DNA of 64,000 bases from Macrostomum lignano (Eukaryota): the NCBI GenBank assembly GCA_002269645.1, contig NIVC01001546.1, positions 1-64,000 of the forward strand. Reading direction: 5' to 3'. The notes beneath the pieces were generated by a model that saw only the letters and a list, made by a program, of their open reading frames with translations, ran no database searches and was not told the origin of the DNA. Each line of letters starts with the position of its first letter. Positions within the stretch are counted from its first letter, which is position 1. Shown in pieces: positions 21,220-61,938 of this stretch. The translations under genes and the position numbers were made by a program.

Positions 21220-21950
21220 CTGTCAGGAGAGACTGAGAAATGTCAGGAAAGGCTTAAAGATGCGGGAAAGGCTTAGAAATGTCAGGAAAGGCTTAGAGAC
21301 GTCAGGAGAGGCTCAGAGATGTCAGGAGAGGCTCAGAGATGTCAGGAGAGACTTAGAGATGTCAGGAGAGGCTCAGAGATGTCAGGAGAGGCTCAGAGAT
21401 GTCAGGAGAGACTTAGAGATGTCAGGAGAGGCTTAGAGATGTCAGGAGAGACTTAGAGATGTCAGGAGAGTCTCAGAGATGTCAAGAGGAACTGAGAAAC
21501 GTCAGGAGAGACTTAGAAATGTCAGGAAAGGCTGAGAAATGTCAGGAGAGGCTTAGAGATATCAGGAGAGGCTTAGAGATGTCAGGAAAGGCTTAGATAT
21601 GTCAGGAGAGGCTTAGAGATGTCAGAAATGCTTAGAGGTGTCAAGAGAGGCTGAGAAACGTCAGGACAGATTTAAAAATGTCAGGAAAGGCTTAGAGGTG
21701 TCAGGAGAGGCTTAGAAATGTCAGGAAAGGCTGAGAACTGTCAGGAGAGGCTTAGAGATATCAGGAGAGGCTTAGAGATGTCAGGAAAGGCTTAGAAATG
21801 TCAGGAGAGGCTTAGAGATGTCAGAAATGCTTAGAGGTGTCAAGAGAGGCTGAGAAATGTCAGGAAAGGCTGAGAACTGTCAGGAGAGGCTTATAGATAA
21901 CAGGAGAGTTCTAGAGATGTCAAGAAAATCTTAGAGATGTCAGGAGAGGC
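21220..21950. repeat. 20-bp minisatellite (CTTAGAGATGTCAGGAGAGG)n upstream of YjbQ
   Basis: Tandem unit read directly. Confidence 0.92.
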
Positions 21951-23138
21951 TTGTAATGTTACTTAAATAACGCTGTAAACTGTCTTTGCGACAAAAATTA
22001 TTTAATTCGAAAAAACAGGAAACTCACAATCTCACAATATGACAACATTTATGATGATTTGGCCACACGCGATGAACTGCGCATGGCGGTGCTCCGATAA
22101 TATACATCAGTAGCAGTAGCATATATATTTCAACCACATATCAATATTACAAGTAGACAAAGCTTTATTTCAATCAGTTGAAGCAAAAATAGGGATTATA
22201 CTTGTACTATTAATTTTCTGAAACACTCACGAGGCTGTAAATTAATTTAATATCTTTAATGACCCAAGCGAACTTACCAAACACCGGATACTGTATGTTT
22301 TACATTCTCTGGAAGGCATATCGTATAATAATTGTACATTATTAAGATGGACCCTAAACTGCAGCAGACAATGCGTCTCGTGCTGTACATTAAACGCCCC
22401 AAAACCGAAGAAGAAAGGTTGCATAACAAATATAACAAAATACACGGCAAAATAACCATGCATGGGGAAAGAGCGGAGAGACAGAGGGACGATTTTGAAA
22501 GCTGAAAGAAACTCAATTAAAATCAAGCAATTAAAGCTGGATAAAACAAATATTTGATTTTAGACAACATACTACTCAATATCGATTTTTATCGAGTAGT
22601 TAATAGGTATTTTTATAGCAAAATATATGCACCGAGTTTTGGCATTCAGGAGTCAACTGAATACGCATCAAGCATCAGGGAGAGGGGAGAGAGAAGATGG
22701 GGAGGAGAGGAGAGAGAGGAGAGTAGCCATTACAGGGTTGCTATCACCGATATGTATCGTTAATAAGTTTATACACTCCGGAGTGAAAATTGGACTTTTT
22801 AGACTTGACTACAAAAGCTGGGGGACAATGAAATAATTAAAGATACAACAGAAAGCACGCAAAAAATTAATTTAACCGTAAAACCCCCAAAGTCATGCAG
22901 CACAGATACTAGAATGTTTAAATATGGTACTAACGAAAGATGCGTTTATCTACTCCGTTTTCAGTAGCATAACTAGAATTTTTGTGTTTTTTTTAAACTT
23001 CGACTTTCTATAACCAGATCCATGCAACTTGGCATACTTCAGCAGTGTTTTCCTATTCAATTGTGTAAACTGAGCAAAAGTACTTATTCTAGTATCTGTG
23101 CAGAAAATAAACAAAGTTAGTAACAATATACATGTAGG

Positions 23139-26100
23139 TCACAGATCTGGTTGACTCGAATCGGTTGGCCGCAGAGCCACGACGGTGCCAGCGGCGACTG
23201 TAACGCCCCGGTCTCTGAGCATGAACTTGCCTAACTCTCTACTATTAGTATAGACGTCGAGGCATAGCGGCCGGTCCAATTGTAGTTCAACTTCGGCGCA
23301 GCAATTGCTGAGTATGTAGCGCGGATGCCGGCGCTCCAGCTGACCAGTGGATTTGTTAATCTGGGCTAGTAGGCGGATTATCGTGACCGGGACTGACACG
23401 GCTTGCTGGTGGAATATTGCTTGGTAGCCCTGGATAGAAAATAGTCGGTAAAGTAATTATAAACTATAAATCACCGCTTTGTAGAAATATGTGATTTCCC
23501 GACCTTCCCGGAGGGGAGTGGAGTTGAAAACTAATCCACTATACTAAATAATAATCATGCAGAAACATTTGATTTCTCAGCCGCCCCGGAGGGGGGTTGG
23601 AATCTAGTCCACTATACTAAATCTTATCAATTCAGAAATACGTGATTTGCCAACCTCTCCGGAGGGGGGTTGGAATCTAGTCCACTATACTAGATCTTAT
23701 CAATTCAGAAATACGTGATTTGCCAACCTTTCCGGAGGGGGGGGGGGTGGAATCTAGTGCACTATACTAAATCTTATCAATTCAGAAATACGTGATTTGC
23801 CAACCTCTCCGGAGGGGGGGGGTTGGAATCTAGTCCACTATACTAAATCTTATCAATTCAGAAATACGTGATTTGCCAACCTCTCCGGAGGGGGGGGTGG
23901 AATCTAGTCCACTATACTAAATCTTATCAATTCAGAAATACGTGATTTGCCAACATCTCCGGAGGGGGGGTTGGAATCTAGTCCACTATACTAAATCTTA
24001 TCAATTCAGAAATACGTGATTTGCCAACCTTTCCGGGGGGGGGGGTGGAATCTAGTCCACTATACTAAATCTTATCAATTCAGAAATACGTGATTTGCCA
24101 ACCTCTCCGGAGGGGGGGGTGGAATCTAGTCCACTATACTAAATCTTATTAATTCAGAAATACGTGATTTGCCAACCTCTCCGGAGGGGGGGTGGAATCT
24201 AGTCCACTATACTAAATCTTATCAATTCATAAATACGTGATTTGCCAACCTCTCCGGAGGGGGGGGGGTTGGAATCTAGTCCACTATACTAAATCTTATC
24301 AATTCAGAAATACGTGATTTGCCAACCTCTCCGGAGGGGGGGGGTGGAATCTAGTCCACTATACTAAATCTTATTAATTCAGAAATACGTGATTTGCCAA
24401 CCTCTCCGGAGGGGGGGGTGGAATCTAGTCCACTATACTAAATCTTATCAATTCAGAAATACGTGATTTGCCAACCTCTCCGGAGGGGGGGTGGAATCTA
24501 GTCCACTATACTAAATCTTATCAATTCATAAATACGTGATTTGCCAACCTCTCCGGAGGGGGGGGGGTTGGAATCTAGTCCACTATACTAAATCTTATCA
24601 ATTCAGAAATACGTGATTTGCCAACCTCTCCGGAGGGGGGGGGTTGGAATCTAGTCCACTATACTAAATCTTATTAATTCAGAAATACGTGATTTGCCAA
24701 CCTCTCCGGAGGGGGGGGGTGGAATCTAGTCCACTATACTAGATCTTATCAATTCAGAAATACGTGATTTGCCAACCTCTCCGGAGGGGGGGGGTTGGAA
24801 TCTAGTCCACTATACTAGATCTTATCAATTCAGAAATACGTGATTTGCCAACCTCTCCGGGGGGGGGGTGGAATCTAGTCCACTATACTAAATCTTATCA
24901 ATTCAGAAATACGTGATTTGCCAACCTCTCCGGAGGGGGGGGGGTGGAATCTAGTCCACTATACTAAATCTTATCAATTCAGAAATACGTGATTTGCCAA
25001 CCTCTCCGGGGGGGGGGGTGGAATCTAGTCCACTATACTAAATCTTATCAATTCAGAAATACGTGATTTGTCAACCTCTCCGGAGGGGGGGGTGGAATCT
25101 AGTCCACTATACTAAATCTTATCAATTCAGAAATACGTGATTTGACAATCTCTCCGGGGGGGTGGAATCTAGTCCACTATACTAAATCTTATCAATTCAG
25201 AAATACGTGATTTGCCAACCTCTCCGGGGGGGGGGGGTGGAATCTAGTCCACTATACTAAATCTTATCAATTCAGAAATACGTGATTTGCCCACCTCTCC
25301 GGAGGGGGGGGGTTGGAATCTAGTCCAATATACTAAAAATATGAAGAGAATCCATTTTTTCTGTGAAAATCATCAAAATTGTTATCAAAAGTCATCAAAA
25401 TTGTCTTTAAATAAGATTCTACTATTTATCGACTTAGTTTATGTCTGAACCATAGATCTTATATTCTAATAATTCTCTGAAGCTTTTGTTAAACATGTAT
25501 ATTAATATAATGTATATTATACTAAGATAAGAAAACAAAGAAAAATTCACCTTAGTAACCGGCTGGCTAACATTTAACAGAAGCAGTTTAGCTCTCAGCC
25601 GATTAGTACACGGACAGGGCGTAGTCACGGAGGACAGCACCGACCCGGGCCCGAAGTGAGCCGGATCGACGCCACCCCCGGAAACGCTGATAGTGCCGGA
25701 ATCGCCGGCAAAGATGGCCGAACCAGAAGCCGCGGAAGCATCCTGACCGCTAGATGTCACAGCTTTAACTGCTACCCGTTGATTAGCCGGCAATAACAAT
25801 AATTTATGACCTGGAGCCGCGTAGCCCGACAGTGCGTTGCCGAAGCAGGCCACCGCGCCGGAGCCGCCGGCGCCGCGACCGCCGGTGGATACCTCCGAGA
25901 TGTAGAAGCGTAGCGGCTTGTCAACCGATCGGGCTGGCGGAGTTAAACGATCTATCAGGTCAACCAGTGTTGGTCCTGATGCGTACCTTTTGGGGTGGCG
26001 ATTAGAAATTATTCGAAGTATTAATCATATTTGTTAATCATATCAACATAGTTTGTTCAGATTTATTATTTGTCTCCAGTGCAATATGTGATTTGACTAG

Positions 26101-28385
26101 AAACCAGACTACTTACCGAAGCTACTGGCTCAACTTACCAAATAGATTATTTAATGAGTATATACTAACTGAACTGAATCTATAAACCAGATTACCGAAT
26201 CTATAAACCAGATTACCGAATCTCCAAACCAGATTAGCAAATCAACAAACCAGATTAGCAAATCAACAAATCAGATTAGCAAATCAACAAATCAGATTAG
26301 CAAATCAACAAACCAGATTAGCAAATCAACAAACCAGATTAGCAAATCTCCAAACCAGATTAGCAAATCAACAAACCAGATTAGCAAATCAACAAACCAG
26401 ATTAGCAAATCAACAAACCAGATTAGCAAATCTCCAAACCAGATTAGCAAATCAACAAACCAGATTAGCAAATCAACAAACCAGATTAGCAAATCAACAA
26501 ACCAGATTAGCAAATCAACAAACCGGATTAACGAATACAAAACCCTGGCTACCGAATCTACAGATCGGGCTACCGAGACTACCAAGCGACTCACCAGGGA
26601 CACAGTTCAGCTGACAAGGGCTTATTGAGATTGGCCCCCTCCAGGCCAGACACGGGACAATAGCTAACGCAGTCCGGCTTAAACCCAACGGATTTCAAAT
26701 ATACGCCAAGTTTGTCGCGAATTTCAGCGAATCGAGTCTCGGACCATTTGGCCGTGTCCATCTTGTTGATGGCTACCACGAGCTGGCCGATGCCCAGACC
26801 CCTGGCTAGCAGGGCATGCTCTCGGGTCTGGCCGCCCTGGTCGAAGCCGCTTTCAAATTCGCCTCTGGTGGCGTTGATCACCAGCAGGGCGGCGTCCGCG
26901 GCCATGGCGCCGCTGATCATGTTCGGTATGAAGTCCTTGTGACCGGGGCAATCTAGAAGATTCACTAGCCGGTGACGCGTGCTCAGCTGACTACGAGCAA
27001 CGTCCATTGTGACGCCGCGTTGGCGCTCCTCTTCGCTTTCGTCTAGGACCCAGGCGAATTGGAAGCTGGGCTTGCCGGCCTTGCGGCACTCCTTTAATGT
27101 ATTTGGCAAGGAGAAGGCGATACTAAGAGTGAGGATAATAGGGATCTGAGTGGCTCGCCCAGCAACTGAGGATCTGGGAGGCTGGCTCAGCAACTGACAC
27201 TCTGGGAGGCTGGCCCAGCAACTGACACTCTGGGAGGCTAGCCCAGCAACTGACACTCTGGGAGGCTGGCCCAGCAACTGACACTCTGGGAGGCTGGCCT
27301 AGCAACTGACACTCTGGGAGGCTGGCCTAGCAACCGACATTCTGAGAAGCTGGCCCAGCGACTGAGGATCTGGGAGGCTGGCCCAACAACTGACACTCTG
27401 GGAGGCTGGCCCAGCGACTGAGGATCTGGGAGGCTGGCCCAACAACTGACACTCTGGGAGGCTGGCCCAGCGACTGAGGATCTGGGAGGCTGGCCCAACA
27501 ACTGATACTCTAAGAGGCTGGCCCAGCAGCTGAGGATCTGGGAGGCTGGCCCAGCGACTGAGGATCTGGGAGGCTGGCCCAGCAACTGAGGATCTGGGAG
27601 GCTGGCCCAGCAACTGAGGATCTGGGAGTTCAGGAAGTTCCAGCCAGGAACTCAAAGACAGAAATTCTAACCACAAACTTTACATATCAAGCTCTAATAC
27701 AACAGCTAGCAGTAAGTACGAGTATAATTGTCAGCCTCACCTGTTCATACCGGTGAATAACTTTCTGACTAACTGCGCCCAGCAGATACAACAAGTGGCC
27801 AATTAGCGTACTTTTACCGGCGTCCACGTGACCAATAATCACTAAATTAATCATGGCCCGGTCGCCCAAGCCAGCGCAATACCGTTTGTAGGCCTCCGCC
27901 GCAGCCGCCGCCGAAGCCGCCGAAGCTTCGGTCGAATCGCCGCCGGCAGAGTCAGGATCGGCGCCGTTTTTTCTAGGCGGCGCCGGGCTGGCGCTACGGG
28001 AGTTGCTGGCGCTACTAGCGGCCTGCTGCTGCTGCTGCTGTTTAGTCGAGAGTAGCCGAGGCGAAGGCGAAGGGACGGATGGCGAGACGGCTACGGCGCC
28101 GGCAAAACCAACTTTGACGCTGTGCGCCGGTCCAGCCGTAGCCACGTGAAGGCGCGCCATTTGTGGCGCCGGCGCCGATTGGGGTGGCTCCTCTTTGACG
28201 TCAGGCAGAGGAGGCTGGGTGATCCGGCCGCCCGTGTCCTTGTCCCGGACAAACAGGTAAGCGTTGGCGGTGGCCGGCGACACGCCGAAGGCCGGCTCGT
28301 CTTCGAACGAGTGGCCGAACGATTCGTCTACGTCGTAGTCTTCGTCGTCGTTTAAAGCGATATTTTTCACTCGACGACGGGACAT
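23139..28385 (-). CDS. HBS1L: HBS1-like translational GTPase; 4 exons; ~622 aa
   Basis: Exons 28385-27741, 27091-26595, 25986-25551 and 23429-23139 total 1869 nt with phases 0/2/0. Motifs: MSRRRVKNI...DDEDYD N-terminus, [61 protein letters not shown]. Confidence 0.95.
23465..25335. repeat. ~73-77-bp minisatellite, ~25 copies with a variable G-run, in HBS1L intron 3
   Basis: Unit GGAATCTAGTCCACTATACTAAATCTTATCAATTCAGAAATACGTGATTTGCCAACCTCTCCGGAG(G)nT; no unique spacers. Confidence 0.95.
26180..26530. repeat. 21-bp minisatellite (AAACCAGATTAGCAAATCAAC)n in HBS1L intron 2
   Basis: Tandem unit read directly. Confidence 0.92.
27140..27630. repeat. 28-bp minisatellite (GAGGATCTGGGAGGCTGGCCCAGCAACT)n in HBS1L intron 1
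   Basis: Tandem unit with GACACTCT variants; same family as 40362-40760. Confidence 0.92.
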
Positions 28386-28484
28386 GATGAGGCTGGCGAG
28401 GCAGAGGCTGGAAGCAGGGAATGGAGCATAGTCGATGGGGGTGGCTCAGAGAGACTAAAAAACGGTAGGGAAGGATGAGACTAG

Positions 28485-29269: not shown

Positions 29270-32200
29270 TTAAGCTGCCTTCTTGGCCGACTTCCGTCTC
29301 AGCTTAGCGGGAGGCGGCGAATCAGATTCCTCGCTGCTGGCCACTTCTTCCGGTTCGGCCACTTTGGCCGAGGCACTCGCAGCTTCCGGCTGTTCAGTTG
29401 GTTCGACATCACCATCCGACGAAGGCGGTAGCCAAACAATGCAACGGGTTGGCCGATAATTCGATTGCAAATCCAGACGGTGCAACAGGTTCAGATTGCC
29501 GGCCTTCTGGTTCAGGCTGGCCAGCACTATGCAGTTGGCGTCTCTGAAATTTAGTTATTATTATATAGATTTAGATTAGTAGCATTGATAATTCGATGAT
29601 TTTCCTTGTATTGCTACTGTCAGTAGTTCAGTTTGGATATAATTAAGTTAAAGTTTTTATACTTTTTAAAATACAATATAAAACAGAGATTTTTGCTTTT
29701 AAGTTGCAAAACTGCAAAGCCTAAATTTCAATTTTCACTATATTAAAATGGTTCGTCATTTCAGGTAGGTATCTATCTATGTGGATTTAATAAAATTAGA
29801 TTGAAAACCAATAGTCATTAAAATAAAACAGATGAAAAGTTACTTTTAGCTTTTGAAATCCTAATTAGTTTAAACTAAAACAGCTGCTTTTAGCTCCTAA
29901 AAACCTAAAACTAAAACATCTACTTTTAGTTCATAAAAACCTAAACTAAAACAGCTACTTTTAGTTCCTAAAAACCTAAACTAAAACAGCTGCTTTTAGC
30001 TCCTAAAAACCTAAAACTAAAACATCTACTTTTAGTTCATAAAAACCTAAACTAAAACAGCTACTTTTAGTTCCTAAAAACCTAAACTAAAACAGCTGCT
30101 TTTAGCTCCTAAAAACCTAAAACTAAAACATCTACTTTTAGTTCATAAAAACCTAAACTAAAACAGCTGCTTTTAGCTCCTAAAAACCTAAACTAAAACA
30201 GCTGCTTTTAGTCCCTAGTTTTAATTTTTAGGTACTAGAAAACCAAAACCGAAACCGGCACTTTTAATCCAAGACTAAATTTAAATTAAACAGCCAGCTA
30301 GCTTTGCCAGATATGCAAAAAAACAATTTGAAAACTTCTTATCCTCATCATTAAACGTACCTGCCAGTACACACGGCCGCAAGCATTTGCCGGTTTTTCT
30401 GACCCCGACCAGCTGCGTCCAACCAAGCGGTCGCGTCCTTGACTCGACCGACCGCCTCCTTCAACAGGTTGCCTTCAGCAATACGTTCTCCGCTAGTAGC
30501 TCTCAAGCAAGTCAGCACACCGTCTGAGCGACCAACAAGCATCGCGGTTTTACACTTTAACGAAGGCCAATCATCTGATGATAAAAATGAATCGTTGCTA
30601 ATCCTAGCACAGGTGACGGCAACTCCAACAGAGCTGCTGATTTTATTGATTTCCCAGCTGTGTTGGCACTCGCAGGTGTCGATGTTGTGCCAGTCTATTG
30701 AGTCGCTGTACACCAGAGCGAACACAGTTGAACTGCACCATAGAATTGAGTCCGGCTGGCGCTTCAGCTTCAGGGCGTAGCTGAGGGGGTTGAGCATGAT
30801 ATTGTGCAGTGAGCTGCTGTTGAAAGGCTATGACAAGTTGTTGTGGCACTGAGCTTCTCAGGGGCTGCTAACCCCTCCTCTACCCCCAGGGTTTCTCAAT
30901 TATGGCTGCTACCCCCTCCTCTACCCCCAGGGTTTCTCAATTATGGCTGCTACCCCCTCCTCTACCCCCAGGTTCCTCAATTATGGCTGCTACCCCTCCT
31001 CTACTCCCAGGGTTTCTCAATTATGGCTGCTACCCCCTCCTCTACCCCCAGGGTTTCTCAATTATGGGTGCTACCCCCTCCTCTACCCCAGGGTTCCTCA
31101 ATTATGGCTGCTACTCTATCTCTAGCCCCAGGGTTTCTCAATTATGGCTGCTACCCCCTCCTCTACCCCCAGGGTTTCTCAATTATGGGTGCTACCGCCT
31201 CCTCTACCCCGGGGTTCCTCAATTATGGCTGCTACCCCCACCTCTACCCCAGGGTTCCTCAATTATGGCTGCTACCCCCTCCTCTACCCCCAGGGTTCCT
31301 CAATTATGGCTGCTACCCCCACCTCTACCCCAGGGTTCCTCAATTATGGCTGCAACCCCCTCCTCTACCCCCAGGGTTTCTCAATTATGGCTGCTACTCT
31401 ATCTCTAGCCCCAGGGTTTCTCAATTATGGCTGCTACTCTATCTCTAGCCCCAGGGTTCCTCAATTATGGCTGCTACTCTATCTCTAGCCCCAGGGTTTC
31501 TCAATTATGGCTGCTACTCTATCTCTACCCCCAGGGTTCCTCAATTATGGCTGCAACCCCCTCCTCTACCCCCAGGGTTTCTCAATTATGGCTGCTACTC
31601 TATCTCTAGCCCCAGGGTTTCTCAATTATGGCTGCTACCCCCTCCTCTACCCCAGGGTTTCTTAATTATGGCTGCTACCCTCTCCTATTACCCCCAGAGT
31701 TTCTCAATTATGGCTGCTACCCCCTTCTTTACCCCCAGGGTTCCTTGATTATGGCTGCAACTCTATCTCTAGCCCCAGGGTTCCTTGATTATGGCTGCAA
31801 CTCTATCTCTAGCCCCAGGGTTTCTCAATTATGGCTGCTACCCCCACCTCTACCCCCAGGGTTCCTCAATTGAATGAATGAGTGATTTTAATAAACGTGT
31901 CATACTCTATTGTTTTACATTTCCTATATAAACCTACATGTAATAAAAGTGTTTTCTATAGAATGAAGAACAGATATGCAAGATAAAACAAATAATTTTA
32001 ACCCAGGGTCATCAAGCTTGCGATAAACAGGAGAGCCAAGAAGATCAGAGCCATTAGAACAGTTACAAGCTGTGTAAACATACATAGAAAACCCGTGTTA
32101 TAGCTAGCTACTGTCAGAAATGCACCTGTTTATAAATTGCTGCATCAAATTAAGATGAAACAAACTGCAAGTTCCAGTGCTAATAAAAATGTTCACTTAT

Positions 32201-33260
32201 AATATATAGCAAACCCTATGTCAGACCCCTAGCGTTAATTTCACACTTTTAACTATAAAAATCTATTTTCTCACTAAACTTATCTACTAGATTCTTAGAA
32301 CAGATCAAGGACGATTCTTAGAACAGTTCAAGAGCGATTCTTAGAAAAGTTTAATGACGATTCTTAGAACAGTTCAAGAGCGATTCTTAGAAAAGTTTAA
32401 TACGATTCTTAGAACAGGTCAAGGACGATTCTTAGAAAATGTCAAGGGCGATTCTTAGAACAGGTCAAGAGTAATTCTTAGAAAAGTTCAGGGACTATTT
32501 TTAGAACAGATTAAGCGCGATTCTTAGAACTGTTTAAGGCCGATTCTTAGAACAGGTCAAGGGCGATTCCAAAAACAGGTCAAGGGTCATTCATAGAACA
32601 GGTCATGGACGATTTTAAAACAGTTTAAGGGCGATTCTTAGAACAGGTCAAGGGCGATTCTTAGAACAGGTCAAGGGCAATTCTAAGAACAGGTCAAGGG
32701 CGATTCTTAGAACAGGTCAACAGAATTTGAACAGAATAACAAAGCAAACAAGCCGGCACTCACGCCTGCCTTCCTCGTATGAGATTCCAGGCACGCAGGG
32801 TGCAATCGTCCCCAATAGACAGAGCCAGCCGACCCGACTGGTGCACTGCCAGAGATCTGACGGCCTCCTTATGCCGACGCATTGTCCGAAGGCACTCCCA
32901 GCCGCGGCAAGACCAAATCGCTAAGCTCTTATCGCTGCTGCAGCTTAGCAGATGAGAATCGCCAAAGAATGCCAGATCCGTAACTCCGCCTTCGTGCTGC
33001 ATCAACTGGCCCAGCTTGCGCAGATTAGACAGATTGTACAGACTAATCTGTTCGTCTCGAGAGCCGCTGGCTAGCCGGCCATTGGGAGACACAGCTAAAC
33101 AAGCTATCGCCTTCAGGTGCGCCGACGCTTCGGTGAATAGAGGCCGAAGTGTACGCGAAAGCGACGAAGATTGATCAGACGGAGTGTCTGCTGACAGATT
33201 GCTGACTGAGTAACCGGCTAGGCCACCCTCTAGGGTGCCGATCACCAGGACTGGGGCGGA
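29270..33260 (-). CDS. PAK1IP1: PAK1-interacting protein 1 (Mak11-like WD40 ribosome biogenesis factor); 3 exons; no genomic ATG
   Basis: Exons 33260-32764, 30780-30361 and 29543-29270 total 1191 nt with phases 2/2. Motifs: VLVIGTLEGGLAGY, LASGSRDEQISLYNL, HEGGVTDLAF, HQSGRLALSIGDDCTLRAWNLIRGRQA-YALK; acidic/basic tail. Confidence 0.88.
29865..30215. repeat. ~35-bp minisatellite in PAK1IP1 intron 2
   Basis: AAAACCTAAACTAAAACAGCTGCTTTTAGCTCCTA tandem. Confidence 0.9.
30865..31870. repeat. ~39-bp minisatellite in PAK1IP1 intron 1
   Basis: CCCCAGGGTTTCTCAATTATGGCTGCTACCCCCTCCTCTA tandem; explains the many MAATPSSTP ORFs. Confidence 0.92.
32285..32720. repeat. ~21-23-bp minisatellite (GATTCTTAGAACAGGTCAAGGGC) in PAK1IP1 intron 1
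   Basis: Imperfect tandem unit. Confidence 0.85.
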
Positions 33261-33349
33261 CTTGTCACGTGACAGCAATTTTAGTAGCAATAAAATTAGT
33301 TTAATGAGAGATAATGCACTGCTAGATAAGCAGATTGACTTAGGAACAA

Positions 33350-34435
33350 TTTTTTGAGAACACTATTCCATTCTGAGAACACTATTTCATTCTGAGACTG
33401 TTTCTGAGAACACTATTCCATTCTGAGAACACTATTTCATTCTGAGACTGTTTTTGAGAACACTATTCCATTCTGGGACTGTTTTTGAGAACACTATTCC
33501 ATTCTGAGAACACTATTTCATTCTGAGACTGTTTTTGAGAACACTATTCCATTCTGAGAACACTATTTGACTCTGAGACTGTTTTTGAGAACACTATTCC
33601 ATTCTGAGAACACTATTCCATTCTGAGACTGTTGTTGAGAACACTATTCCATTCTGAGACTGTTGTTGAGAACACTATTCCATTCTGAGACTGTTTTTGA
33701 GAACACTATTCCATTCTGAGACTGTTTTTGAGAACACTATTCCATTCTGAGACTGTTTTTGAGAACACTATTCCATTCTGAGACTGTTGTTGAGAACACT
33801 ATTCCATTCTGAGACTGTTTTTGAGAACACTATTCCATTCTGAGACTGTTTTTGAGAACAATATTTCATTCTGAGACTGTTTTTGAGAACATTATTCCAT
33901 TCTGAGACTGTTTTTGAGAACCCTATTCCATTCTGAGACTGTTTTTGAGAACACTATTCCATTCTGAGACTGTTGTTGAGAACACAATTCCATTCTGAGA
34001 CTGTTTTTGAGAACACTATTCCATTCTGAGACTGTTGTTGAGAACACTATTCCATTCTGAGACTGTTTTTGAGAACACTATTCCATTCTGAGACTGTTTT
34101 TGAGAACACTATTCCATTCTGAGACTGTTGTTGAGAACACTATTCCATTCTGAGACTGTTTTTGAGAACACTATTCCATTCTGAGACTGTTTTTGAGAAC
34201 AATATTTCATTCTGAGACTGTTTTTGAGAACATTATTCCATTCTGAGACTGTTTTTGAGAACCCTATTCCATTCTGAGACTGTTTTTGAGAACACTATTC
34301 CATTCTGAGACTGTTTTTGAGAACACTATTCCATTCTGAGACTGTTTTTGAGAACACTATTCCATTCTGAGACTGTTTTTGAGAACACTATTCCATTCTG
34401 AGACTGTTTTTGAGAACACTATTCCATTCTGAGGC
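33350..34435. repeat. 31-bp minisatellite (GAGAACACTATTCCATTCTGAGACTGTTTTT)n upstream of PAK1IP1
   Basis: Tandem unit read directly. Confidence 0.94.
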
Positions 34436-35149
34436 TCTAGTGAATAACGTTAGTAAAATAGTAACACACGAAGAACATGTTAATGCCAAAACAGCTAGTA
34501 ACTAAGGGATCATTATGCATATTTTGTATTTGTATAAATATTATTGGTATAATTAATGAAAAAACTTGATTGCACCTCAATAAGCTACTACAGGCTACTA
34601 ATAATGTCTCAGTATCAATAGAATACAAATAGAATAAGTATATTGTAATATATAATAAACATAAGGCTATAAACTCTAAGCAAAAAACTCGAATGATTCC
34701 AATCGAATGTTTGGCGTAAAGAATACCAAAAAAGATTGCTTTATGAAAATATATAAAATAGTCGATATATTGTTGAAAAAAACTTGTCTGCAAAAAATCT
34801 AGAGGCACTACTTGTAACCTAATGGAGTATATAATGAAGATTGATAATGCGTACTGATCAAAGAGAACTACAAGAACAACAAAAAACAATACCTATTGCA
34901 CTCAATATCATAAATTTTATTGTTAACTGGAGATTCATTGTTGCATATAAAATGGGATTGAAAACGTCTAGCAATGGCCTAAATTGCCAATAAATCACCA
35001 TAAAATAGATGCAAACCTATTCAGTATTAGTATTGATAATTCTATAGTAAGCACTAGAATTTATGGTATAAATATTATGTTGGATATACGATGGGCAGCC
35101 TTCACCAGACAGATGATATGACAAATTAAATAGACAAACTGGAATAGGA

Positions 35150-35720
<571 letters not shown>

Positions 35721-35808: not shown

Positions 35809-37342
35809 CTAAGCCGGCAGCACTTCAGTCTTGAAGTCCTTAGTAACCAGGATGAGCAGGCTGCCGGACTGCGGCACGTCGGCGGCCCCGCTGACCCAGT
35901 TGGCAAGCAGGTCGGCCACAAAGCTCAGCGGAGTCCACTCGCTGAGGCCGGCCTCGCCCATGGCCCGCCTGTTAGCCGGGGTGTCCAGCGTGACGGGCAG
36001 GATAGCCAGGGCGCGGGCGCCGCTGGGTAGGCCCGAGTTTTTCTCGGCAAGCGAGCGAACCTGAGGCCAAATAGGCGAGGTTTGATACAAAATGTGAATA
36101 AGAACACATTGAATGAAAGAAAAGATGAGATAAAGGTAGCGGTTTGAAGAGAAGGAATCCGATCAAGAGAAGAAAATTAAGGGATCAAATGAAGGGCATG
36201 AAGAGATCGGATAAAGGGCATAAGTGGAATGAAAGGATCGAATGAAAGGAAGGGAATGAAGGGATCAAGTGAAGTGAATGTAGGGATCATATGAAAGGAA
36301 TAAAGGGATCAGATGAATGAATGGAATGAAGGGATCAGATGAATGAAGGGAAAGAAGGGATCAGATGAATGAAGGGAATGAAGGGATCAGATGAATGAAG
36401 GGAATGAAGGGATCAGATGAATGAAGGGAATGAAGGGATCATATGAATGAAGGGAATGAAGGGATCAGATGAATGAAGGGAATGAAGGGATCAGATGAAT
36501 GAAGGGAAAGAAGGGATCAGATGAATGAAGGGAATGAAGGGATCAGATGAATGAAGGGAATGAAGGGATCAGATGAATGAAGGGAAAGAAGGGATCAGAT
36601 GAATGAAGGGAATGAAGGGATCAGATGAATGAAGGGAATGAAGGGATCAGATGAATGAAGGGAATGAAGGGATCAGGTGAAGGGAATTAATGGATCGAAT
36701 GGCAGGAAAGGAATAAAGGAATCAGATGAAGGGAATGAAGGGATCATGCGAGAATCATAAAGGGATTCGATAAAGGTCATAAGGGATAAAGGGCATAAGT
36801 AGAATGAAGGGACCGGACAGAAATACTAAAAATGCAGTTGGCACACAGACAGACGAGGGGCCGCTCACCAGGTGATGCACGGCAGCCTTGGCCATGCCGT
36901 AGCCAATCATGCCGGGCGTCGGTCCCAACGCCGGCTGGGCGCCGGTGAGCAGCAGCAGCGAGTCCTTGGAGTCCAGCAGGTGCTTGGCGGCCAGAGAGGC
37001 GGCAATAACGCTAGTCCAGACCGACTGCTTCAGCACCAAGTCGCAGTTGGCAACGAACTTGTCGCTGCCAGCGTCTCCGCCGGCCCAGCCGCCGGCAACG
37101 CAGATCACGGCGTCGAGTTTAGCGCCGTCCAACACTTTGGCAACGTCGGCGGCTACGCCGGCGTGTTGATCGGTTAGACTGCCGCTAGAAGGCGACACGG
37201 CTACGCTAGCATCGGCGTCGGGATTGTCAGCGCCGATGTCTACGCTGCACACCCAGCAGCCCAGCTGCTTGAATTTCATTACGCAGGCTGAGCCAAGGGC
37301 GCCGCGACCGCCGTACACGAGGATTCTTTTAGTTGAGGACAT
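35809..37342 (-). CDS. QDPR: Dihydropteridine reductase (SDR family); 2 exons; ~241 aa
   Basis: Exons 37342-36869 and 36060-35809, phase 0. Motifs: ILVYGGRGALGSAC, ICVAGGWAGG, KQSVWTSVIA, TPGMIGYGMAKAAVHHL-VRSLA, ILPVTLDTPANR. An alternative upstream in-frame ATG lies at 37360. Confidence 0.96.
36150..36750. repeat. 26-bp minisatellite (GAAGGGAATGAAGGGATCAGATGAAT)n in the QDPR intron
   Basis: Tandem unit read directly. Confidence 0.92.
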
Positions 37343-37434
37343 GTTGCTTTTGGCTTGCATGAATTGGGGGGAATTGCTGCTGTTAGTGCCGCCAATGTAG
37401 GTGATTGTAGGAGTTTACTGTCACTGCCACCCAT

Positions 37435-40072: not shown

Positions 40073-43000
40073 TTAAAGCTTGTAGAATGTCTCCTCAACG
40101 TCATTGGCGGAGACTAATTGCTTTGATCGAACCACCAGTTCGGGATTTGCCAGAGCATCAGCCGGTGAGCAGTCGGCTAAGCCGGGATCAGCCACAGTTG
40201 CCAGGGCAGGGGCGCCAGAGCCGTGCTGGCGCCTGGCCTGCTGGCTGTGCAGATAGCGAGCCGTACGCCTGGCAGGCATGCAGCTGTAGGCAGCCTGGGT
40301 GTCTTCCTCTGATAGGCTGCGGCGTGGGGTGGGGACTCTTGCGTGAGGTTCAGGCTACTCTAACTGAGGATCTGGGAGGCTGGCCCAGCGACTGACACTC
40401 TGGGAGGCTGGCCCAGCAACTGAGGATCTGGGGGTCGCCAAGCGACTGAGGATCTGGGAGGCTGGCCCAGCGACTGAGGATCTGGGAGGCTGGCCCAGCA
40501 ACTGAGGATCTGGGAGGCTGGCCCAGCGACTGAGGATCTGGGAGGCTGGCCCAGCAACTGAGGATCTGGGAGGCTGGCCCAGCAACTGAGGATCTGGGAG
40601 GCTGGCCCAGCAACTGAGGATCTGGGAGGGTCGCCAAGCAACTGAGGATCTGGGAGGCTGGCCCAGCAACTGAGGATCTGGGAGGCTGGCCCAGCAACTG
40701 AGGATCTGGGAGGCTGGCCCAGCAACTGAGGACCCGTGAGGGTGGCCAAGCAACTGAGAACCCCATCAAAGCTCTCATATAGTTTAACATTAGATAAAAC
40801 AAAAAACCAATGTAGAAAGTACGAATAAAACCGACCAGCCCTACCTGCTCTCATTCTCCAATTTTTCAACGTTAGTCTTTAACTGCATAAATTTGAGATC
40901 AAATTTTCTCAAAAATTCGTTAGAATCCATCTCGCTAAAATCTCTGTTGCTAGCAAAAGTTTTCGACCTGGTGACGGATGCAGAAGAAGCCGATTTCATC
41001 GAGTGGTTTGGCTTAGCCGAACTGTTAGCAGCCGCAGCAGGCTGAGCAGGTGGCTCATCATCGGCCACAAACTGCTCAAAGCTGACTTCCGCCTCAACCA
41101 CAGTCGCGGGCGGAGTCGGGTTCCTAGAAGAAGTGCCCGAGGCGGAACCGCTGCGACTGCCAGCTGCCGGCCCAGAAAGCTCGGGCACTTTGATGCTGGA
41201 CTTCAACTGTAGACCATCGTTGCTCCACAAGCCGTTGAGTCTTTTTAGCTCTTCCACCTGAGTGGAAAATTAAGATCATTGAGTTAGGCAGTCAACTAAC
41301 AGCCAGCAAGGAGACAAATTAAGAAGTAAAGTTCAGTGGCCCTTGGCCATAGAGGCACACAGATATGCAAGAAAGTATAGATGTAACTTCGATTAATGTT
41401 CTGTACCAAAGTTCGACAAACGTTTTTATAAGGGCCAGATAAAGAATATACTTCATAGTCGCTGGTCAGATGAGAGTGGAAAGGAGAGGGAATAGATGAG
41501 ATATGAGAGAAAGGAGAGAGGGGAGAGGTGAACCTTTGTGTAGGCCAGAGTTTCAAGTAGGCCAGATTACTCTTGTGAAGTTTTAAAAGACCCAAGGGCC
41601 AGATAAAGAGGGGTTTTGTAGGCCTGGCCACATATAGCTAAATACTATTATTTCAATATACAATATCCATATTTTTAATTCATATATTATCTAAAATAAT
41701 AGAAACTTTTAAAAATTTTGGGATTGCAAGAATTCTATCAACTATCAAATTTGAAGCACCTATCTATATAGGCCTAGAGTAGGAGTCAGCAAACTTTTTA
41801 GAGCAAGGGCTAAATAGCCCAACTTTGAAAGGCTTAGAGGCCAATAACAAACAAATGAAAGACCATACTTGCATCATGCCAATATTTATTTTGTTTTATT
41901 TAGTCTTAATTTAGTCTAGAACTAGACTTTCAACATAGGTTAAGCGTAAGAAAGATAAGACCAAGAGAAAAGAGGGTGAAAGCCTAGGGGGCAGATGGAA
42001 TGCTAGATCTAGCCCTGGGGTTGCAAGTTACTAACTCCTAGCCTAGTCTTTTACTGTACAGTTAAGCAGTTTCTATAGGTCAAAAGGGGCTTTAGAATTA
42101 AAATTAAAGAAATTAATTTTTTTTATATTGAACTTTTTTACTAATACTATAGTTGGCACCCTAGTTTTTATTATAAGACCTAGTGTACCAAATAGCATAA
42201 TGATTCTTATGACAAAAAATCTTATCTATTCTTTATAATCTTTATAATATATGTACTAAATAGCAAATTAAACTTAAATTTCCTATAAGCTTTTCATATA
42301 TTTGTTGTTTATTTGCTATATTACTTAAATATTCTATAAATTTAAAGTTATATATTCATTTTGTTTTTTTATAAATTTCAATATTTTGTAATACTTTCCT
42401 ATTTTTTATGAGGGATGTCCCAGAAGTAGTGTCACTTTTGCTTGCTTCCACAAGTACTAATGTGAGTTGAAAAAAAATAATATGCCTTAAAAGTTAGCAG
42501 CTTAATTTAGCTTTCATGCCATGAAAGCCTGATTTTTATAAGTGCTTCCTGCTGCAAGCAGCATGCATTTGTTTGCATACCCTTAGCCATAAAAATACAC
42601 ACTGCATAGTGCTTCTATGCTTACTCAAAAGAAAGCCACAAGTATAGCTGATCAAGCATAGAGTTGCAAGATAGCAGCTGCAAGATTTGTTCCAGTCATG
42701 GACCCTGGCAGTATGGACCCTAACATGGACCCTAACATTCACTCTATAGAATGGCAGAGACATGCAGTTTTTACACTTTAGAGTCCTAGTCAGAAATGCC
42801 CTGAAATTCCCAAAAACCTGACCCACATTCACAGTCTCAATTCCATTAGTTGACAAACAGTTTACAGGTGGATCAAATAGCTCGAGACTGGCTATAGATA
42901 TCAAAGGCCACCTTTGGGTAAGTTGGCAAAACATACTGCTAGCCAGCCTTGAACTGCTGTCTTGCAACTCTGTGCTTGATCAACTGTACTTGTGGCTTTT

Positions 43001-59678: not shown

Positions 59679-59949
59679 CTTGCGATCAAAGAAATAAAAC
59701 CGATAAAAATAACTGTCAGATTTAACCTAAAATGCGTTTTACCCCCAAAAGTACTTTGGGATTAGCGATTAGCGGTTTCTCTTCATTATCTTCACTTTCT
59801 ATTTAATAAGAGCTTTCTAATGTATATTTTTTCATTAATTTCTGTCAATCCTACGCGAAAAGTCATAAATCATTTTGTTGCGATTTTGATTGATTTATGG
59901 CCGCACCTGTCATGTTTTTATGACCCTGTGGGAACTGATAGGATCTCCC

Positions 59950-60085
59950 AGTCACGTGATTCTGGGTGGCAACAAGCTTAGCCAATCAGAAAATTCGGCG
60001 CTCATTTTAACAAATCGGCTCAGCCAATCAGAATCCACGTGTTCCATTATAACAAACTGCGGTCCAGTTGGCGGCTATTTAAACC
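59950..60085 (+). promoter_or_regulatory. Putative Pol II promoter in the foldback centre (E-box, two CCAAT boxes, TATA-like)
   Basis: GTCACGTGAT at 59951; GCCAATCAG at 59981 and 60023; TATTTAAA at 60076. Motif match only. Confidence 0.35.
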
Positions 60086-61938
60086 GATGTTTTTGGCCCG
60101 CTCAAACCTCAACCTCCTGGGACCTTAGCCTAGCTTGAGACATCCCGGAGCGCGACCGTCGTTTCTTGATCCCCGGATTGCAACTCCCCCCACCATCATC
60201 AAGGACGAATTCCCCCGGTCAACAGCAGTGAACATCAAAGTTGAGAGCATCACCTGCTAGCTATCTGCGAAGATTGTGACATCAGCATCATTCCGGGTCT
60301 ACAGCTGCGAAGCACTAAGCCGATTCGGTCACTGTGGATTGCCTGGTCTCCGGCTGTTGAGTTTCTGATTGGTTGGGTGAGAAGCTACCTAGACTTGCTT
60401 GATTGGGTGATTCCCTATCTGTCCCCTGTTTCAGTAGCTGGATTAGGCGCACACTTTTGCTCGTTTTGTTCAGTAGTGCTGTTACTGAGGCAGAAATCAT
60501 TCAATAATACTGCTAGTAGTCTGAAACTCCAATTCAATCTGAGGTGTGAAGTGATTTAAGGAGAAGGTTAAATCTGACAGTTATTTTTATCGGTTTTATT
60601 TCTTTGTTCGCCGATGGCTCAGATGAGTAGCTAAGCTAGTAGGCGCCGGTCACAGTGGACCAATGGCAAGGCAGTTCTCAGTCGTTCAATCTATCTTGAA
60701 ATCAGTGAGCGAAATTGCCAATAGTGCAAAATCGGCGCCAGAGATGTACTTGTGCACTCTAGGTTCGCCAAGCGGCTCGGGTAATGAATCATGCGGTCTC
60801 TGAAGTTCGAGTTAGTCTATCATCAGCGCTATGAGAGGCTAGTTGGCGCGTTGAAGGCCAAAAGTACAATTCCTCGTATTTAGCAATGTAATAGTACATG
60901 TAGCTACCCCATAGTCTCGCCACTGCAAGAATCCCCTGCACAAGTCCCCTCTGTACCTGCATGGCCAATGCGATCAAGTCCCAGCAGTGTCCCTTATCAT
61001 CGGCTATGACTTCGAGATAGACAGCAAAAAGACACTAGTTGGCAGGTAAGTGCAAAGCCCCCTCTAGTCGGAAGCCCGATTTCGAGAGTCCCGGTGTGGT
61101 GAGCCGGGACGCACGGGCTGGTGGCAGCGAGTTAGCTTAGTCTGCGGATTAGCTAATTTCTACCTTCAAAATTCTCCCTGCTTGTCTCTCGCTGTCCCTC
61201 TCTTAGCTATAGGACCTAGACTGCTCGCCACACGATCAAGCTACCATGGGGCTGACCATCTGACAGGAGTGGGGGGCCAGGACTCTAATTGATTTATTTC
61301 TGAGACCTAAGGCCCGAAGGCTTCCCCACAAGGGGGCCGAAAGGCTGAAACCCATCACTTTCAGCTTTCTCGCCCAACCAACTTTCAGCCAGAGGAATCA
61401 CAGTGCGCTCAGATTCTGCCGATTGGCATGCCTACTAGCTTTTGGCATAACTTTTTCTTCTGTTGAGGCTGGAGAATTCGGCCAACATCGCTGTGTCGCT
61501 GCACGCTGCACACAGCGGCTGCTGCCGACAACTTGCAATGCCGCTGCTGCTGCGTGCCAGATGGTGTTGATGGAGGCGCTGCTGCATGCTCACGAGTCAC
61601 GACTGGCACTCTGTTGCTGTTGCGTGTCAGCTACGGTGTCGTTGGAGTTGTCCAGTGCAGCTGCTGCCTGCCAATCGATTCAGTGCAACACGGATGCACC
61701 CGTGTTGTGAGTCGATCGCCAGCGTACTTTGAATTGATTTGATAGACTCCTTTACATCATTCTTCTGGCTGATCCATTGTTGGCTTTTGAAGCTTTTTGT
61801 GGCATCTGTTAGAAGCTTTTTAGGGCAAACGAAAATTAGGGGCGCCATAATCGCCAGCTACAAGGGGGGAGGCGACTGCTCCCCTCCACCCCCGCCCCTG
61901 AGCATACATAGCTAGCAATCAAAACAAATACCAGCAAC

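What the first reader, a model, noticed from the sequence alone, without database searches (positions are those of the whole stretch)
33230..33300. PAK1IP1 has no start codon; an in-frame acceptor suggests the spliced leader supplies the AUG
Seen: the frame upstream of SAPVLVIGTLEGGLAGY is closed by a stop with no ATG. The sequence ...ctaattttattgctactaaaattgctgtcacgtgacaag|TCC GCC CCA puts an AG exactly on a codon boundary. Adding an AUG gives MSAPVLVIGT..., where homologues start (human MELVAGCYE), and a ~397-aa protein. Established: flatworm SL exons end in AUG, which can act as the initiator Met. Inference: translation of this gene depends on trans-splicing. A weak cis alternative exists (ATG|gtgatt at 35001-34997).
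Basis: partly seen in the sequence, partly recalled or inferred. Interest (0 to 1): 0.72.

Follow-up and report, generated by a model that had tools for sequence, protein, structure and literature searches.

The report
ATG-less PAK1IP1 start, likely spliced-leader AUG
A flatworm (Macrostomum-type) ribosome-assembly gene has no start codon of its own where its protein should begin, and most likely borrows the AUG at the end of the trans-spliced leader RNA; this mechanism is already documented in flatworms, and it is not shown here because no RNA data could be reached.

Summary
On the minus strand the PAK1IP1 frame is closed by TAG (33365-33363). There is no in-frame ATG before SAPVLVIGT, and the AG at 33262-33261 lies on a codon boundary. 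Adding Met gives a 397-aa protein that is collinear with named PAK1IP1 proteins from their second or third residue.

I could support the unstated premise that this is a flatworm. A 1.6-kb dispersed repeat in the window is 92% identical to a Macrostomum lignano contig, which equals the divergence among copies inside the window. Repeat architecture and codon preferences also fit. The M. lignano spliced leader (SL) ends in ATG|GTAAG, and 45% of its conserved genes are trans-spliced.

Other support:
- A TACTAA branch-like site lies 19 nt upstream, and this AG is the first one after it.
- GC content jumps sharply at this point.
- No GT[AG]AG donor occurs in the 2.5 kb upstream.
- The gene spacing looks operon-like.

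Weaknesses:
- Three of the five upstream AGs are in frame, so the codon-boundary argument alone is weak.
- A more pyrimidine-rich CAG 10 nt downstream is out of frame.
- The codon at the missing Met is AAG, one base from ATG.
- No transcript evidence could be reached.

Verdict: a probable (about 0.65) new example of a known flatworm mechanism. Interest is modest.

The parts
33363..33365 (-). In-frame stop codon TAG that closes the PAK1IP1 frame upstream.
33261..33362 (-). AT-rich stretch of 34 open codons with no ATG (GC 0.23-0.40). I read it as the 3' end of an outron. It contains in-frame AGs at 33364/3, 33340/39 and 33262/1, and out-of-frame AGs at 33323/2 and 33320/19.
33281..33286 (-). 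TACTAA branch-point-like hexamer. Its last A is 19 nt upstream of the AG at 33262/1, and no other AG lies in between.
   Evidence: sequence; CTAAY-type motifs are also seen upstream of cis acceptors
33266..33271 (-). CACGTG E-box, 4 nt upstream of the candidate acceptor. Its significance is unknown.
   Evidence: sequence
33261..33262 (-). Candidate trans-splice acceptor AG (gtgacAAG|TCC), in phase 0 with the coding sequence. The AAG codon (33263-33261) is one substitution from ATG.
33251..33252 (-). Competing AG inside the coding sequence (tccgccccAG|TCC TGG TGA). It is preceded by a pyrimidine-rich CAG context but is out of frame: an SL AUG joined here would give MSW-stop.
32764..33260 (-). 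PAK1IP1 coding exon 1 (SAPVLVIGT...RGRQ, phase-2 donor ggc|GTGAGT). It encodes the WD40 repeats.
30361..30780 (-). PAK1IP1 exon 2 (acceptor ccccctcag|, donor gcag|GTACGT).
29270..29543 (-). PAK1IP1 exon 3, ending with stop codon TAA at 29272-29270.
33351..34433 (.). Tandem array of a 31-bp unit (about 35 copies) immediately upstream of the exon. It fills most of the presumed outron or intercistronic spacer.
34993..35001 (-). The only ATG|GT in the 2.5 kb upstream (ATG|GTGATT). This is the best, but still weak, candidate for a cis-spliced exon carrying the start codon.
34916..34921 (-). The only AATAAA between QDPR and PAK1IP1. It is probably the poly(A) signal of the upstream QDPR gene.
35809..37360 (-). 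Upstream neighbour on the same strand: a QDPR-like gene with two coding exons (37360-36869 and 36060-35809) and its own ATG.
28385..28409 (-). Downstream neighbour HBS1L. Its own ATG is at 28385-28383, preceded by a strong YTNCAG-type acceptor (gcttccag|CCTCTG, exon start 28407).
59732..61360 (.). Dispersed repeat that is 91.7% identical over 1645 bp to M. lignano contig NIVC01001095.1. This is the basis for assigning the window to Macrostomum.

Best explanation
The window comes from Macrostomum lignano or a very close relative. In this flatworm about 30-39% of all genes, and 45% of genes conserved with human, receive one 35-nt spliced leader that ends in ...UUGCAUG.

I propose the following. 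The PAK1IP1 pre-mRNA is transcribed from upstream, possibly as the second gene of a QDPR-PAK1IP1-HBS1L polycistron. Its AT-rich, repeat-filled 5' part behaves as an outron. The spliceosome uses the TACTAA-like branch site at 33286-33281 and the first AG downstream of it (33262/1), and joins the SL to TCC at 33260. The mature mRNA then reads ...UUGC AUG UCC GCC CCA..., so the last three bases of the SL act as the initiator codon. The product is a 397-aa protein, MSAPVLVIGT..., whose N-terminus lies where PAK1IP1 proteins of other animals begin. Translation of this ribosome-biogenesis factor would therefore depend on trans-splicing.

Shown here: the missing ATG, the frame relations, orthology to PAK1IP1, the affinity of the window to Macrostomum, and the sequence features of the site.
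Taken from the literature: the sequence of the SL, and the use of its AUG as initiator in other flatworms.
Inferred: that this site is used, and that the SL AUG initiates translation here.
For: (1) No in-frame ATG lies between the TAG at 33365-33363 and codon 87 of the 397-aa model. The 85 residues in between align to named PAK1IP1 proteins from their residue 3, with 34% identity and E=2e-37. The N-terminal region is therefore translated and needs a start codon within a few codons of 33260.

(2) The AG at 33262/1 is in phase 0. Adding ATG gives an uninterrupted 397-aa ORF across three exons with canonical splice sites.

(3) Taxon. A 1645-bp repeat is 91.7% identical to M. lignano contig NIVC01001095.1, which equals the divergence among copies within the window. 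Minisatellite arrays cover about 23% of the window and about 34% of an M. lignano locus. The preferred codons (CCG, AGC, GGC, CTG, GCC) match the choices in the published M. lignano codon-optimised reporters.

(4) The M. lignano SL is CGGTCTCTTACTGCGAAGACTCAATTTATTGCATG followed by GTAAG. 45.3% of conserved genes and 85% of stem-cell genes are trans-spliced. The ATG is retained in the SLs of two other Macrostomum species and is described there as a likely start codon.

(5) Use of the SL AUG as initiator is documented in Schistosoma and Echinococcus.

(6) Site anatomy. TACTAA lies 19 nt upstream with no AG in between. GC content jumps from 0.27 to 0.60 at 33275-33260. AAG acceptors are used by two cis introns of the neighbouring HBS1L gene. 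The pyrimidine content upstream of the site (0.50) falls within the range of cis acceptors (0.45-0.75).

(7) There are zero GT[AG]AG donors in the 2547 nt upstream on this strand. The shuffle mean is 3.3 and P(0)=0.04. Seven of the eight cis donors inferred in the window have this motif. This fits the definition of an outron: an acceptor with no donor upstream in cis.

(8) Operon-like layout. Five host genes lie on one strand. After removing repeats, the CDS-to-CDS gaps are about 900 bp (QDPR to PAK1IP1) and about 430 bp (PAK1IP1 to HBS1L), below the 1-kb threshold used for M. lignano operons.
Against: - There is no transcript, cDNA, read or annotated protein for this gene. Every exact and homology look-up failed.
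- The AG-on-a-codon-boundary argument is weak. Three of the five upstream AGs are in frame.
- The site is gacAAG, not the YTNCAG motif found at 44% of M. lignano trans-splice sites.
- A more pyrimidine-rich CAG 10 nt downstream (33252/1) and two AGs at 33323/33320 would put the SL AUG out of frame.
- AAG at 33263-33261 is a single A-to-T change from ATG. A start-loss allele, a degenerate duplicate or a base error would look the same. M. lignano carries many duplicated genes.
- M. lignano proteins are present in the searched collection, yet no PAK1IP1 relative was retrieved. The exact species or assembly of the window therefore remains unidentified.
- The taxon assignment rests on one repeat family plus general genome features.
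Confidence: 0.65

Rival explanations
1. Ordinary cis-splicing. A short 5' exon in the AT-rich unique segment (34440-35150) carries the ATG and is spliced over the 31-bp array. It would join either to the AG at 33262/1 (ATG|GTGATT at 35001, giving MSAPV...) or to the CAG at 33252/1 (ATGATATTGAGTGCAATAG|GTATTG at 34911-34893, giving MILSAIVLVIGT...).
For: Frame-compatible combinations exist. Every intron in this window contains a tandem array, so the array upstream of the exon could simply be intron 1. The other ATG-less gene in the window (UPF0047) does have a good cis option of this kind. The CAG at 33252/1 sits in a more pyrimidine-rich CAG context than 33262/1.
Against: The 2.5 kb upstream holds no GT[AG]AG donor, although 7 of the 8 cis donors inferred here, and 65% in M. 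lignano, have that motif. The best candidate donors score at most 7 of 9 consensus positions, and GTATTG scores 5 of 9. The candidate exons overlap the probable 3' UTR and the only AATAAA (34921) of the upstream QDPR gene. The candidate peptides have no support from homologues.
Confidence: 0.15
2. Loss of the start codon or a base error. The ancestral or true sequence is gacATGtcc. The window shows an A-for-T substitution at 33262, either in a decaying duplicate copy of a polyploid genome or as an assembly error. In that case this copy is not translated normally.
For: The codon at exactly the expected Met position is AAG, one substitution from ATG. M. lignano assemblies contain extensive duplicated blocks. 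No identical protein was found in public collections.
Against: The remaining 396 codons, both introns and all splice sites are intact, and residues conserved across the family are kept. A substitution error at one specific base is improbable in itself. In a flatworm an ATG-to-AAG change creates an in-frame acceptor that the SL AUG can rescue, so this rival may describe how the trans-splicing dependence arose and need not compete with it.
Confidence: 0.08
3. Initiation at a non-AUG codon on an mRNA that is not trans-spliced. Candidates are the in-frame near-cognate codons upstream, such as TTG at 33278-33276 (aaaTTGc) or CTG at 33275-33273.
For: Several near-cognate codons lie in frame within 10 codons of the conserved N-terminus.
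Against: Their sequence context is poor and the stretch is AT-rich and looks non-coding. Near-cognate initiation is inefficient (general knowledge) and would be unusual as the only start of a conserved ribosome-biogenesis factor. An organism with an AUG-bearing SL has a simpler solution.
Confidence: 0.04

Closest known systems
Flatworm mRNAs that use the 3'-terminal AUG of the spliced leader as initiator Met. This was first shown by Cheng, Cohen, Ndegwa and Davis (J Biol Chem 2006) for Schistosoma mRNAs, and extended to Echinococcus granulosus by Parkinson et al. (2012, PMC3510090).
   Same: The organism has an SL that ends in AUG. The gene lacks an in-frame genomic AUG at the N-terminus shared with its orthologues. 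An AG acceptor is in frame with no stop in between. The predicted protein becomes full length only when the SL AUG is added.
   Different: The known cases were defined from SL-bearing cDNAs, and initiation at the SL AUG was tested experimentally. Here the SL junction is only predicted from genomic DNA. The species is a free-living macrostomid, for which the papers I could read mention the SL ATG only as a likely start codon.
SL trans-spliced genes and operons of Macrostomum lignano (Wudarski et al. 2017; Ustyantsev and Berezikov 2021).
   Same: The gene is conserved with human. Neighbours lie on the same strand. The intergenic spacers are rich in repeats and fall below 1 kb once the repeats are removed. 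The upstream region lacks a donor.
   Different: The acceptor is gacAAG, not the YTNCAG motif enriched at M. lignano trans-splice sites. I could not consult any SL-read track for this locus.
PAK1IP1 / yeast Mak11, a WD40 factor in 60S ribosome biogenesis.
   Same: The protein is collinear with named PAK1IP1 proteins over the whole length, at 31-34% identity. It shares WD40 repeats, the conserved WECL and LALS.G.D.TLR.WNL motifs, RVKD, VWL and a basic C-terminal tail.
   Different: It has about 20 extra residues in the middle and a shorter basic tail. The gene has only two introns. The C-terminal half is too divergent to hit anything by sequence alone. Its function was not tested.

Membership tests
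mRNAs initiating at the flatworm SL 3'-AUG | The organism has an SL RNA whose exon ends in AUG immediately before the GU donor. | tested here: met
   This is indirect. The window is assigned to Macrostomum by a repeat 91.7% identical over 1645 bp to an M. lignano contig. The M. lignano SL ends ...TTGCATG|GTAAG, and the ATG is kept in M. cliftonense and M. hystrix. There is no SL RNA gene in the window itself.
mRNAs initiating at the flatworm SL 3'-AUG | There is no genomic in-frame AUG at or near the N-terminus shared with orthologues. | tested here: met
mRNAs initiating at the flatworm SL 3'-AUG | A 3' splice acceptor lies in phase 0 with the ORF, with no stop between it and the conserved sequence. 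| tested here: met
   The AG at 33262/1 meets this, and so do 33340/39 and 33364/3. Out-of-frame AGs are also present.
mRNAs initiating at the flatworm SL 3'-AUG | cDNA or RNA-seq reads join the SL to that acceptor. | not testable with these tools
   No transcript data for this organism could be reached. Exact look-ups of MSAPV..., SAPV... and other variants found nothing.
mRNAs initiating at the flatworm SL 3'-AUG | Translation starts at the SL AUG. | not testable with these tools
   This needs ribosome profiling, N-terminal proteomics or reporter assays.
PAK1IP1 / Mak11 | A WD40 beta-propeller protein that is collinear with named PAK1IP1 proteins over its full length. | tested here: met
   Pfam WD40 E=3e-22. 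BLASTP against human PAK1IP1 gives E=2e-37 starting at residue 3. The recalled human sequence was validated by named hits at E of about 1e-200. Alignment.
PAK1IP1 / Mak11 | Reciprocal best hit or phylogenetic orthology among WD40 proteins. | tested here: inconclusive
   The search of protein representatives was swamped by multi-repeat WD40 proteins. Only mammalian PAK1IP1 proteins were retrieved by the profile search.
Macrostomum SL-resolved operon | Adjacent genes lie on the same strand with a repeat-adjusted intergenic distance below 1 kb. | tested here: met
   QDPR stop to the PAK1IP1 acceptor is 2548 bp, or 900 bp after removing 1648 bp of arrays. PAK1IP1 stop to the HBS1L ATG is 884 bp, or 430 bp after removing 454 bp of arrays.
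Macrostomum SL-resolved operon | [quoted passage not shown] | not testable with these tools
   No RNA data.

The most novel reading that the evidence does not exclude
A single ATG-to-AAG substitution at the start codon turned the initiator of PAK1IP1 into an in-frame 3' splice site. The SL AUG now replaces the lost Met exactly. This would make a ribosome-biogenesis gene in an early-branching free-living flatworm obligately dependent on trans-splicing, inside a QDPR-PAK1IP1-HBS1L operon. The same CAAG| configuration at the ATG-less UPF0047 gene 12 kb away hints that this one-step route is recurrent. If so, dependence on the SL AUG predates the parasitic flatworms in which it was described.
Probability: 0.15. 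Interest if true: 0.5.

Novelty: new member of a known kind. Interest (0 to 1): 0.3.

Why it matters
If it is confirmed, three things follow.

(i) It flags a gene that standard gene finders will truncate, start at Met87, or mark as 5'-partial. Annotation of Macrostomum and other flatworm genomes has to add the SL ATG.

(ii) It extends documented dependence on the SL AUG from parasitic flatworms to a macrostomid. That supports the view that the conserved 3' AUG of flatworm SLs is kept because a set of essential genes needs it.

(iii) It couples synthesis of a 60S biogenesis factor to trans-splicing in an animal where 85% of stem-cell genes are trans-spliced.

None of this would surprise a specialist. 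The mechanism has been published since 2006, and the M. lignano genome browser probably already shows SL reads at this locus.

Tried and rejected
- A homology search with exon 1 found nothing. A search with the HBS1L GTPase domain gave only relatives of 65% identity or less, with no taxon signal. The look-up of its best hit led to an unidentified sequencing run.
- Exact look-ups all failed: the Gypsy ORF and a Harbinger-like ORF, six PAK1IP1 N-terminal variants including MSAPV..., and two QDPR variants.
- The search of protein representatives was swamped by multi-WD40 proteins and gave no orthologues.
- PDB sequence searches gave only generic WD40 hits. Neither human PAK1IP1 nor a match to the C-terminal half was found.
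- The metagenome scan gave one unrelated WD40 locus.
- Searches for an SL RNA gene in the window were negative: the M. lignano SL with 3 mismatches, SL-like ...GCATG|GT ends, and ATG|GT followed by an Sm site (which found only LTR copies). Rfam found nothing.
- BLAST of the published M. lignano promoter and UTR sequences against the window gave no real hits.
- PAK1IP1, QDPR and HBS1L were not found in the supplementary tables of two M. lignano papers.
- I briefly thought the first 260 nt of the exon lacked any ATG, which would have hinted at a long leader. That was an artefact of a truncated scan. An out-of-frame ATG lies at 33082, so I dropped the argument.
- I considered the UPF0047 gene as a second independent case. 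It has a good cis-spliced alternative, so it counts only as a lead.
- I considered an acoel origin. The acoel SL (Symsagittifera) does not end in AUG and that genome is 36.7% GC. The repeat match to M. lignano argues against it.
Full report
**What is in the sequence**

The gene lies on the minus strand. I translated the strand upstream of SAPVLVIGTLEGG and listed every ATG, stop and AG.
- The frame is open for 34 codons only (CSQKIVPKSICLSSSALSLIKLILLLLKLLSRDK).
- It is closed by TAG at 33365-33363.
- It holds no in-frame ATG.
- The AG at 33262-33261 is followed by TCC GCC CCA, on a codon boundary.

With canonical junctions the gene has three coding exons: 33260-32764, 30780-30361 and 29543-29270. 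The junctions are ggc|GTGAGT...ccccctcag| and gcag|GTACGT...aaatttcag|. The exons encode 396 codons plus TAA, so adding Met gives 397 aa. The first ATG downstream (33082) is out of frame. The first in-frame ATG (33002) is codon 87 of the 397-aa model.

**Identity of the gene**

Exon 1 carries WD40 repeats. I recalled the human PAK1IP1 sequence from memory and checked it. A profile made from it and the window protein retrieved about 120 mammalian proteins that NCBI and UniRef name p21-activated protein kinase-interacting protein 1, at E=1e-150 to 1e-223.

The window protein aligns collinearly to these from its residue 6 to their residue 3, at 34% identity with E=2e-37. It shares family motifs to the C-terminus. 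The residues before codon 87 are therefore coding, and the family N-terminus falls within three residues of position 33260. A start codon is needed there, and the genome does not supply one.

**Which organism**

Database routes failed to place the window.

I then used the M. lignano histone H2B sequence printed in a paper's supplement. It showed that M. lignano proteins are in the collection, and it let me fetch about 60 kb of M. lignano genomic DNA.

BLASTN of the window against these loci gave a repeat that is not a microsatellite:
- window 59732-61360 matches NIVC01001095.1 at 91.7% identity over 1645 bp;
- window 58838-59313 matches it at 87.5% over 512 bp.

Copies of this family inside the window are 91-92% identical to one another. 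The M. lignano copy is therefore no more distant than the window's own copies.

The genome architecture also agrees:
- Arrays with 14-150-bp units cover about 23% of the window and about 34% of an M. lignano locus. They fill introns and gene spacers in both.
- GC content is 0.43-0.47 in both.
- The preferred codons (Pro CCG, Ser AGC, Gly GGC, Leu CTG, Ala GCC) are the ones chosen in the M. lignano codon-optimised reporters.

I conclude that the window is from M. lignano or a very close relative. I could not establish the exact assembly or species. No PAK1IP1 relative from M. lignano was retrieved, and I cannot explain that.

**What is known about that organism**

- The M. lignano SL is CGGTCTCTTACTGCGAAGACTCAATTTATTGCATG, followed by the donor GTAAG.
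- 30-39% of its genes, 45.3% of genes conserved with human and 85% of neoblast genes are trans-spliced.
- A YTNCAG motif marks 44% of trans-splice acceptors.
- GT[GA]AG is found at 65% of cis donor regions.
- Operons are common. Their spacers are inflated by repeats, with a mode near 100 bp and a working threshold of 1 kb after the repeats are subtracted.
- The SLs of M. cliftonense and M. hystrix keep the terminal ATG, which the authors call a likely start codon.
- All reported flatworm SLs end in AUG.
- In Schistosoma the SL AUG is in frame in 28% of trans-spliced mRNAs, and more than 40 cDNAs need it (citing Cheng et al. 2006).
- In Echinococcus granulosus 143 of 187 SL-bearing clusters are full length only with the SL ATG. 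Use of the SL AUG is conserved for 10 of the 15 SL-library orthologues of Schistosoma japonicum genes known to use it.

**Anatomy of the candidate site**

- Upstream of 33260 the GC content is 0.23-0.40. From 33270 downstream it is 0.57-0.67.
- A TACTAA hexamer (33286-33281) lies 19 nt before the AG, and no other AG lies in between.
- The acceptor is gacAAG. AAG acceptors also serve two cis introns of HBS1L (ttaaag|GAG and ccaaaag|G).
- The pyrimidine content upstream (0.50) is inside the range seen for cis acceptors (0.45-0.75).
- The 2547 nt between the QDPR stop codon and the site contain no GT[AG]AG on this strand. The shuffle mean is 3.3 and P(0)=0.04. Seven of the eight cis donors I inferred in the window have this motif. 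An acceptor with no donor upstream in cis is the stated requirement for SL trans-splicing.
- The only AATAAA in that interval (34921) is best read as the QDPR poly(A) signal.

After removing the arrays, the gap from QDPR to PAK1IP1 is about 900 bp. The gap from PAK1IP1 to HBS1L is about 430 bp. That second spacer holds a single AATAAA at 28856, and a strong gcttccag| acceptor lies 22 nt before the HBS1L ATG. All five host genes in the window lie on the minus strand. The layout fits an SL-resolved gene cluster, in which internal genes must be trans-spliced.

**Weak points**

1. An AG on a codon boundary is expected one time in three. Here three of the five AGs in the open stretch are in frame.
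2. The out-of-frame AGs sit in contexts that look as good or better. ctgcttatctag|cag| (33323 and 33320) and tccgccccag| (33252/1) would give MQCIISH*, MCIISH* and MSW*.
3. The codon in the Met position is AAG, one substitution from ATG. A start-loss allele or duplicate in a genome known for duplications, or a base error, would give the same picture. In a flatworm the same mutation would create the in-frame acceptor, so it may be the origin of the SL dependence and not a true alternative to it.
4. Cis-spliced options exist, but only with poor donors (ATG|GTGATT...AATAG|GTATTG into the CAG at 33252/1).
5. No RNA evidence could be reached with the tools.

**A second case in the window**

The UPF0047/YjbQ-like gene (Pfam PF01894) also opens without an in-frame ATG. 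A TAA lies at 21118-21116, followed by SKTALFLSNSSKASAAVSGATVWYQTVLKVSGKSRGCHYITD. An in-frame agCAAG|ACG lies at 21111/10, and a 20-bp array sits just upstream.

This gene does have consensus donors upstream and a good cis option. ATGTTGTCATATT|GTGAGA at 22048 spliced to ccgccgcag| at 21067 would give MLSYFSGATVWYQ. I therefore treat it as a lead and not as support.

**Weighing the explanations**

In M. lignano the prior that a conserved gene of the growth and ribosome-biogenesis class is trans-spliced is 0.45-0.85. In other flatworms a sizeable minority of trans-spliced mRNAs need the SL AUG. A cis exon that carries only the ATG, or a few codons, and uses a non-consensus donor is several times less likely. 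Error or pseudogene explanations are rarer still.

My estimates, allowing for residual doubt about the taxon and about which AG is used:
- trans-splicing supplies the AUG: about 0.65;
- a cis-spliced ATG exon: about 0.15;
- start-codon loss or base error: about 0.08;
- non-AUG initiation: about 0.04.

**Novelty and interest**

The mechanism has been established since 2006. It is routinely mentioned in flatworm genome papers, and Macrostomum annotators are aware of it. This is a probable new example in a free-living macrostomid, in a 60S biogenesis factor. It is useful for annotation and mildly interesting for the evolution of SL dependence, but it is not surprising. Interest: 0.3.

Noticed in passing
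window 20796-21118 (minus strand); later exon at 17843-18142: A second host gene, UPF0047/YjbQ-like, also lacks an in-frame ATG before its conserved N-terminus (VWYQTVLKVSGKSRGCHYITD). An in-frame agCAAG|ACG lies at 21111/10, and a 20-bp tandem array (21221-21952) lies just upstream. Unlike PAK1IP1, it has a plausible cis-spliced ATG exon (ATGTTGTCATATT|GTGAGA at 22048, joined to ccgccgcag| at 21067).
   Followed up: partly
window 17.8-52.6 kb (minus strand): All five host genes lie on the minus strand: LysM-domain (52605 to about 40844), QDPR (37360-35809), PAK1IP1 (33260-29270), HBS1L (28385 to about 23140) and UPF0047 (about 21109-17843). After subtracting repeats, the QDPR-PAK1IP1 and PAK1IP1-HBS1L spacers are about 900 and about 430 bp. 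Each spacer holds a single AATAAA (34921 and 28856). A strong gcttccag| acceptor lies 22 nt before the HBS1L ATG. This could be an SL-resolved operon.
   Followed up: partly
window 59732-61360 and 58838-59313; also 54051-54227: A dispersed repeat, associated with the LTRs of the Gypsy element, is 87-92% identical to M. lignano contig NIVC01001095.1 (locus L003, 12701-14333). This identifies the window as Macrostomum.
   Followed up: yes
whole window, e.g. 16083-17082, 18114-20458, 23483-25337, 30863-31871, 33351-34433: Minisatellite arrays with 14-150-bp units occupy about 23% of the window. They sit in almost every intron and gene spacer. The same 28-bp unit (ATCTGGGAGGCTGGCCCAGCAACTGAGA) forms arrays in an HBS1L intron (27144-27628) and within the span of the LysM-domain gene (40362-40758).
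   Followed up: partly
window 1049-6745 (minus strand): A long intact ORF of a Helitron (Helitron_like_N, PIF1 helicase, DUF6570; 1898 codons). Its N-terminal region looks like an OTU-type protease, but I did not confirm that with Pfam.
   Followed up: partly
window 54472-57933 (plus strand), flanked by repeats at about 54.0-54.4 and 58.1-58.8 kb: A Ty3/Gypsy-type retrotransposon with an intact 1153-aa gag-pol ORF (RVT_1, RNase H, integrase). Its GC content is 0.61, much higher than the host DNA around it. This suggests a young insertion.
   Followed up: partly
window 9351-9650 and 11739-12038: A perfect direct duplication with 2388-bp spacing (100% identity over at least the 300 nt that the tool compared). 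It is either a recent tandem duplication or an assembly artefact.
   Followed up: no
window 43625-46606 (plus strand), inside the 11-kb intron of the LysM-domain gene: Two long ORFs on the opposite strand to the host gene. One is Harbinger/PIF-like (HTH_Tnp_4, 604 codons). The other has a weak ubiquitin C-terminal hydrolase (UCH) match (320 codons). Together they probably form one transposon.
   Followed up: no
window 33266-33271 (minus strand): A CACGTG E-box lies 4 nt upstream of the candidate acceptor of a ribosome-biogenesis gene. It could be a Myc/Max-type site or chance.
   Followed up: no
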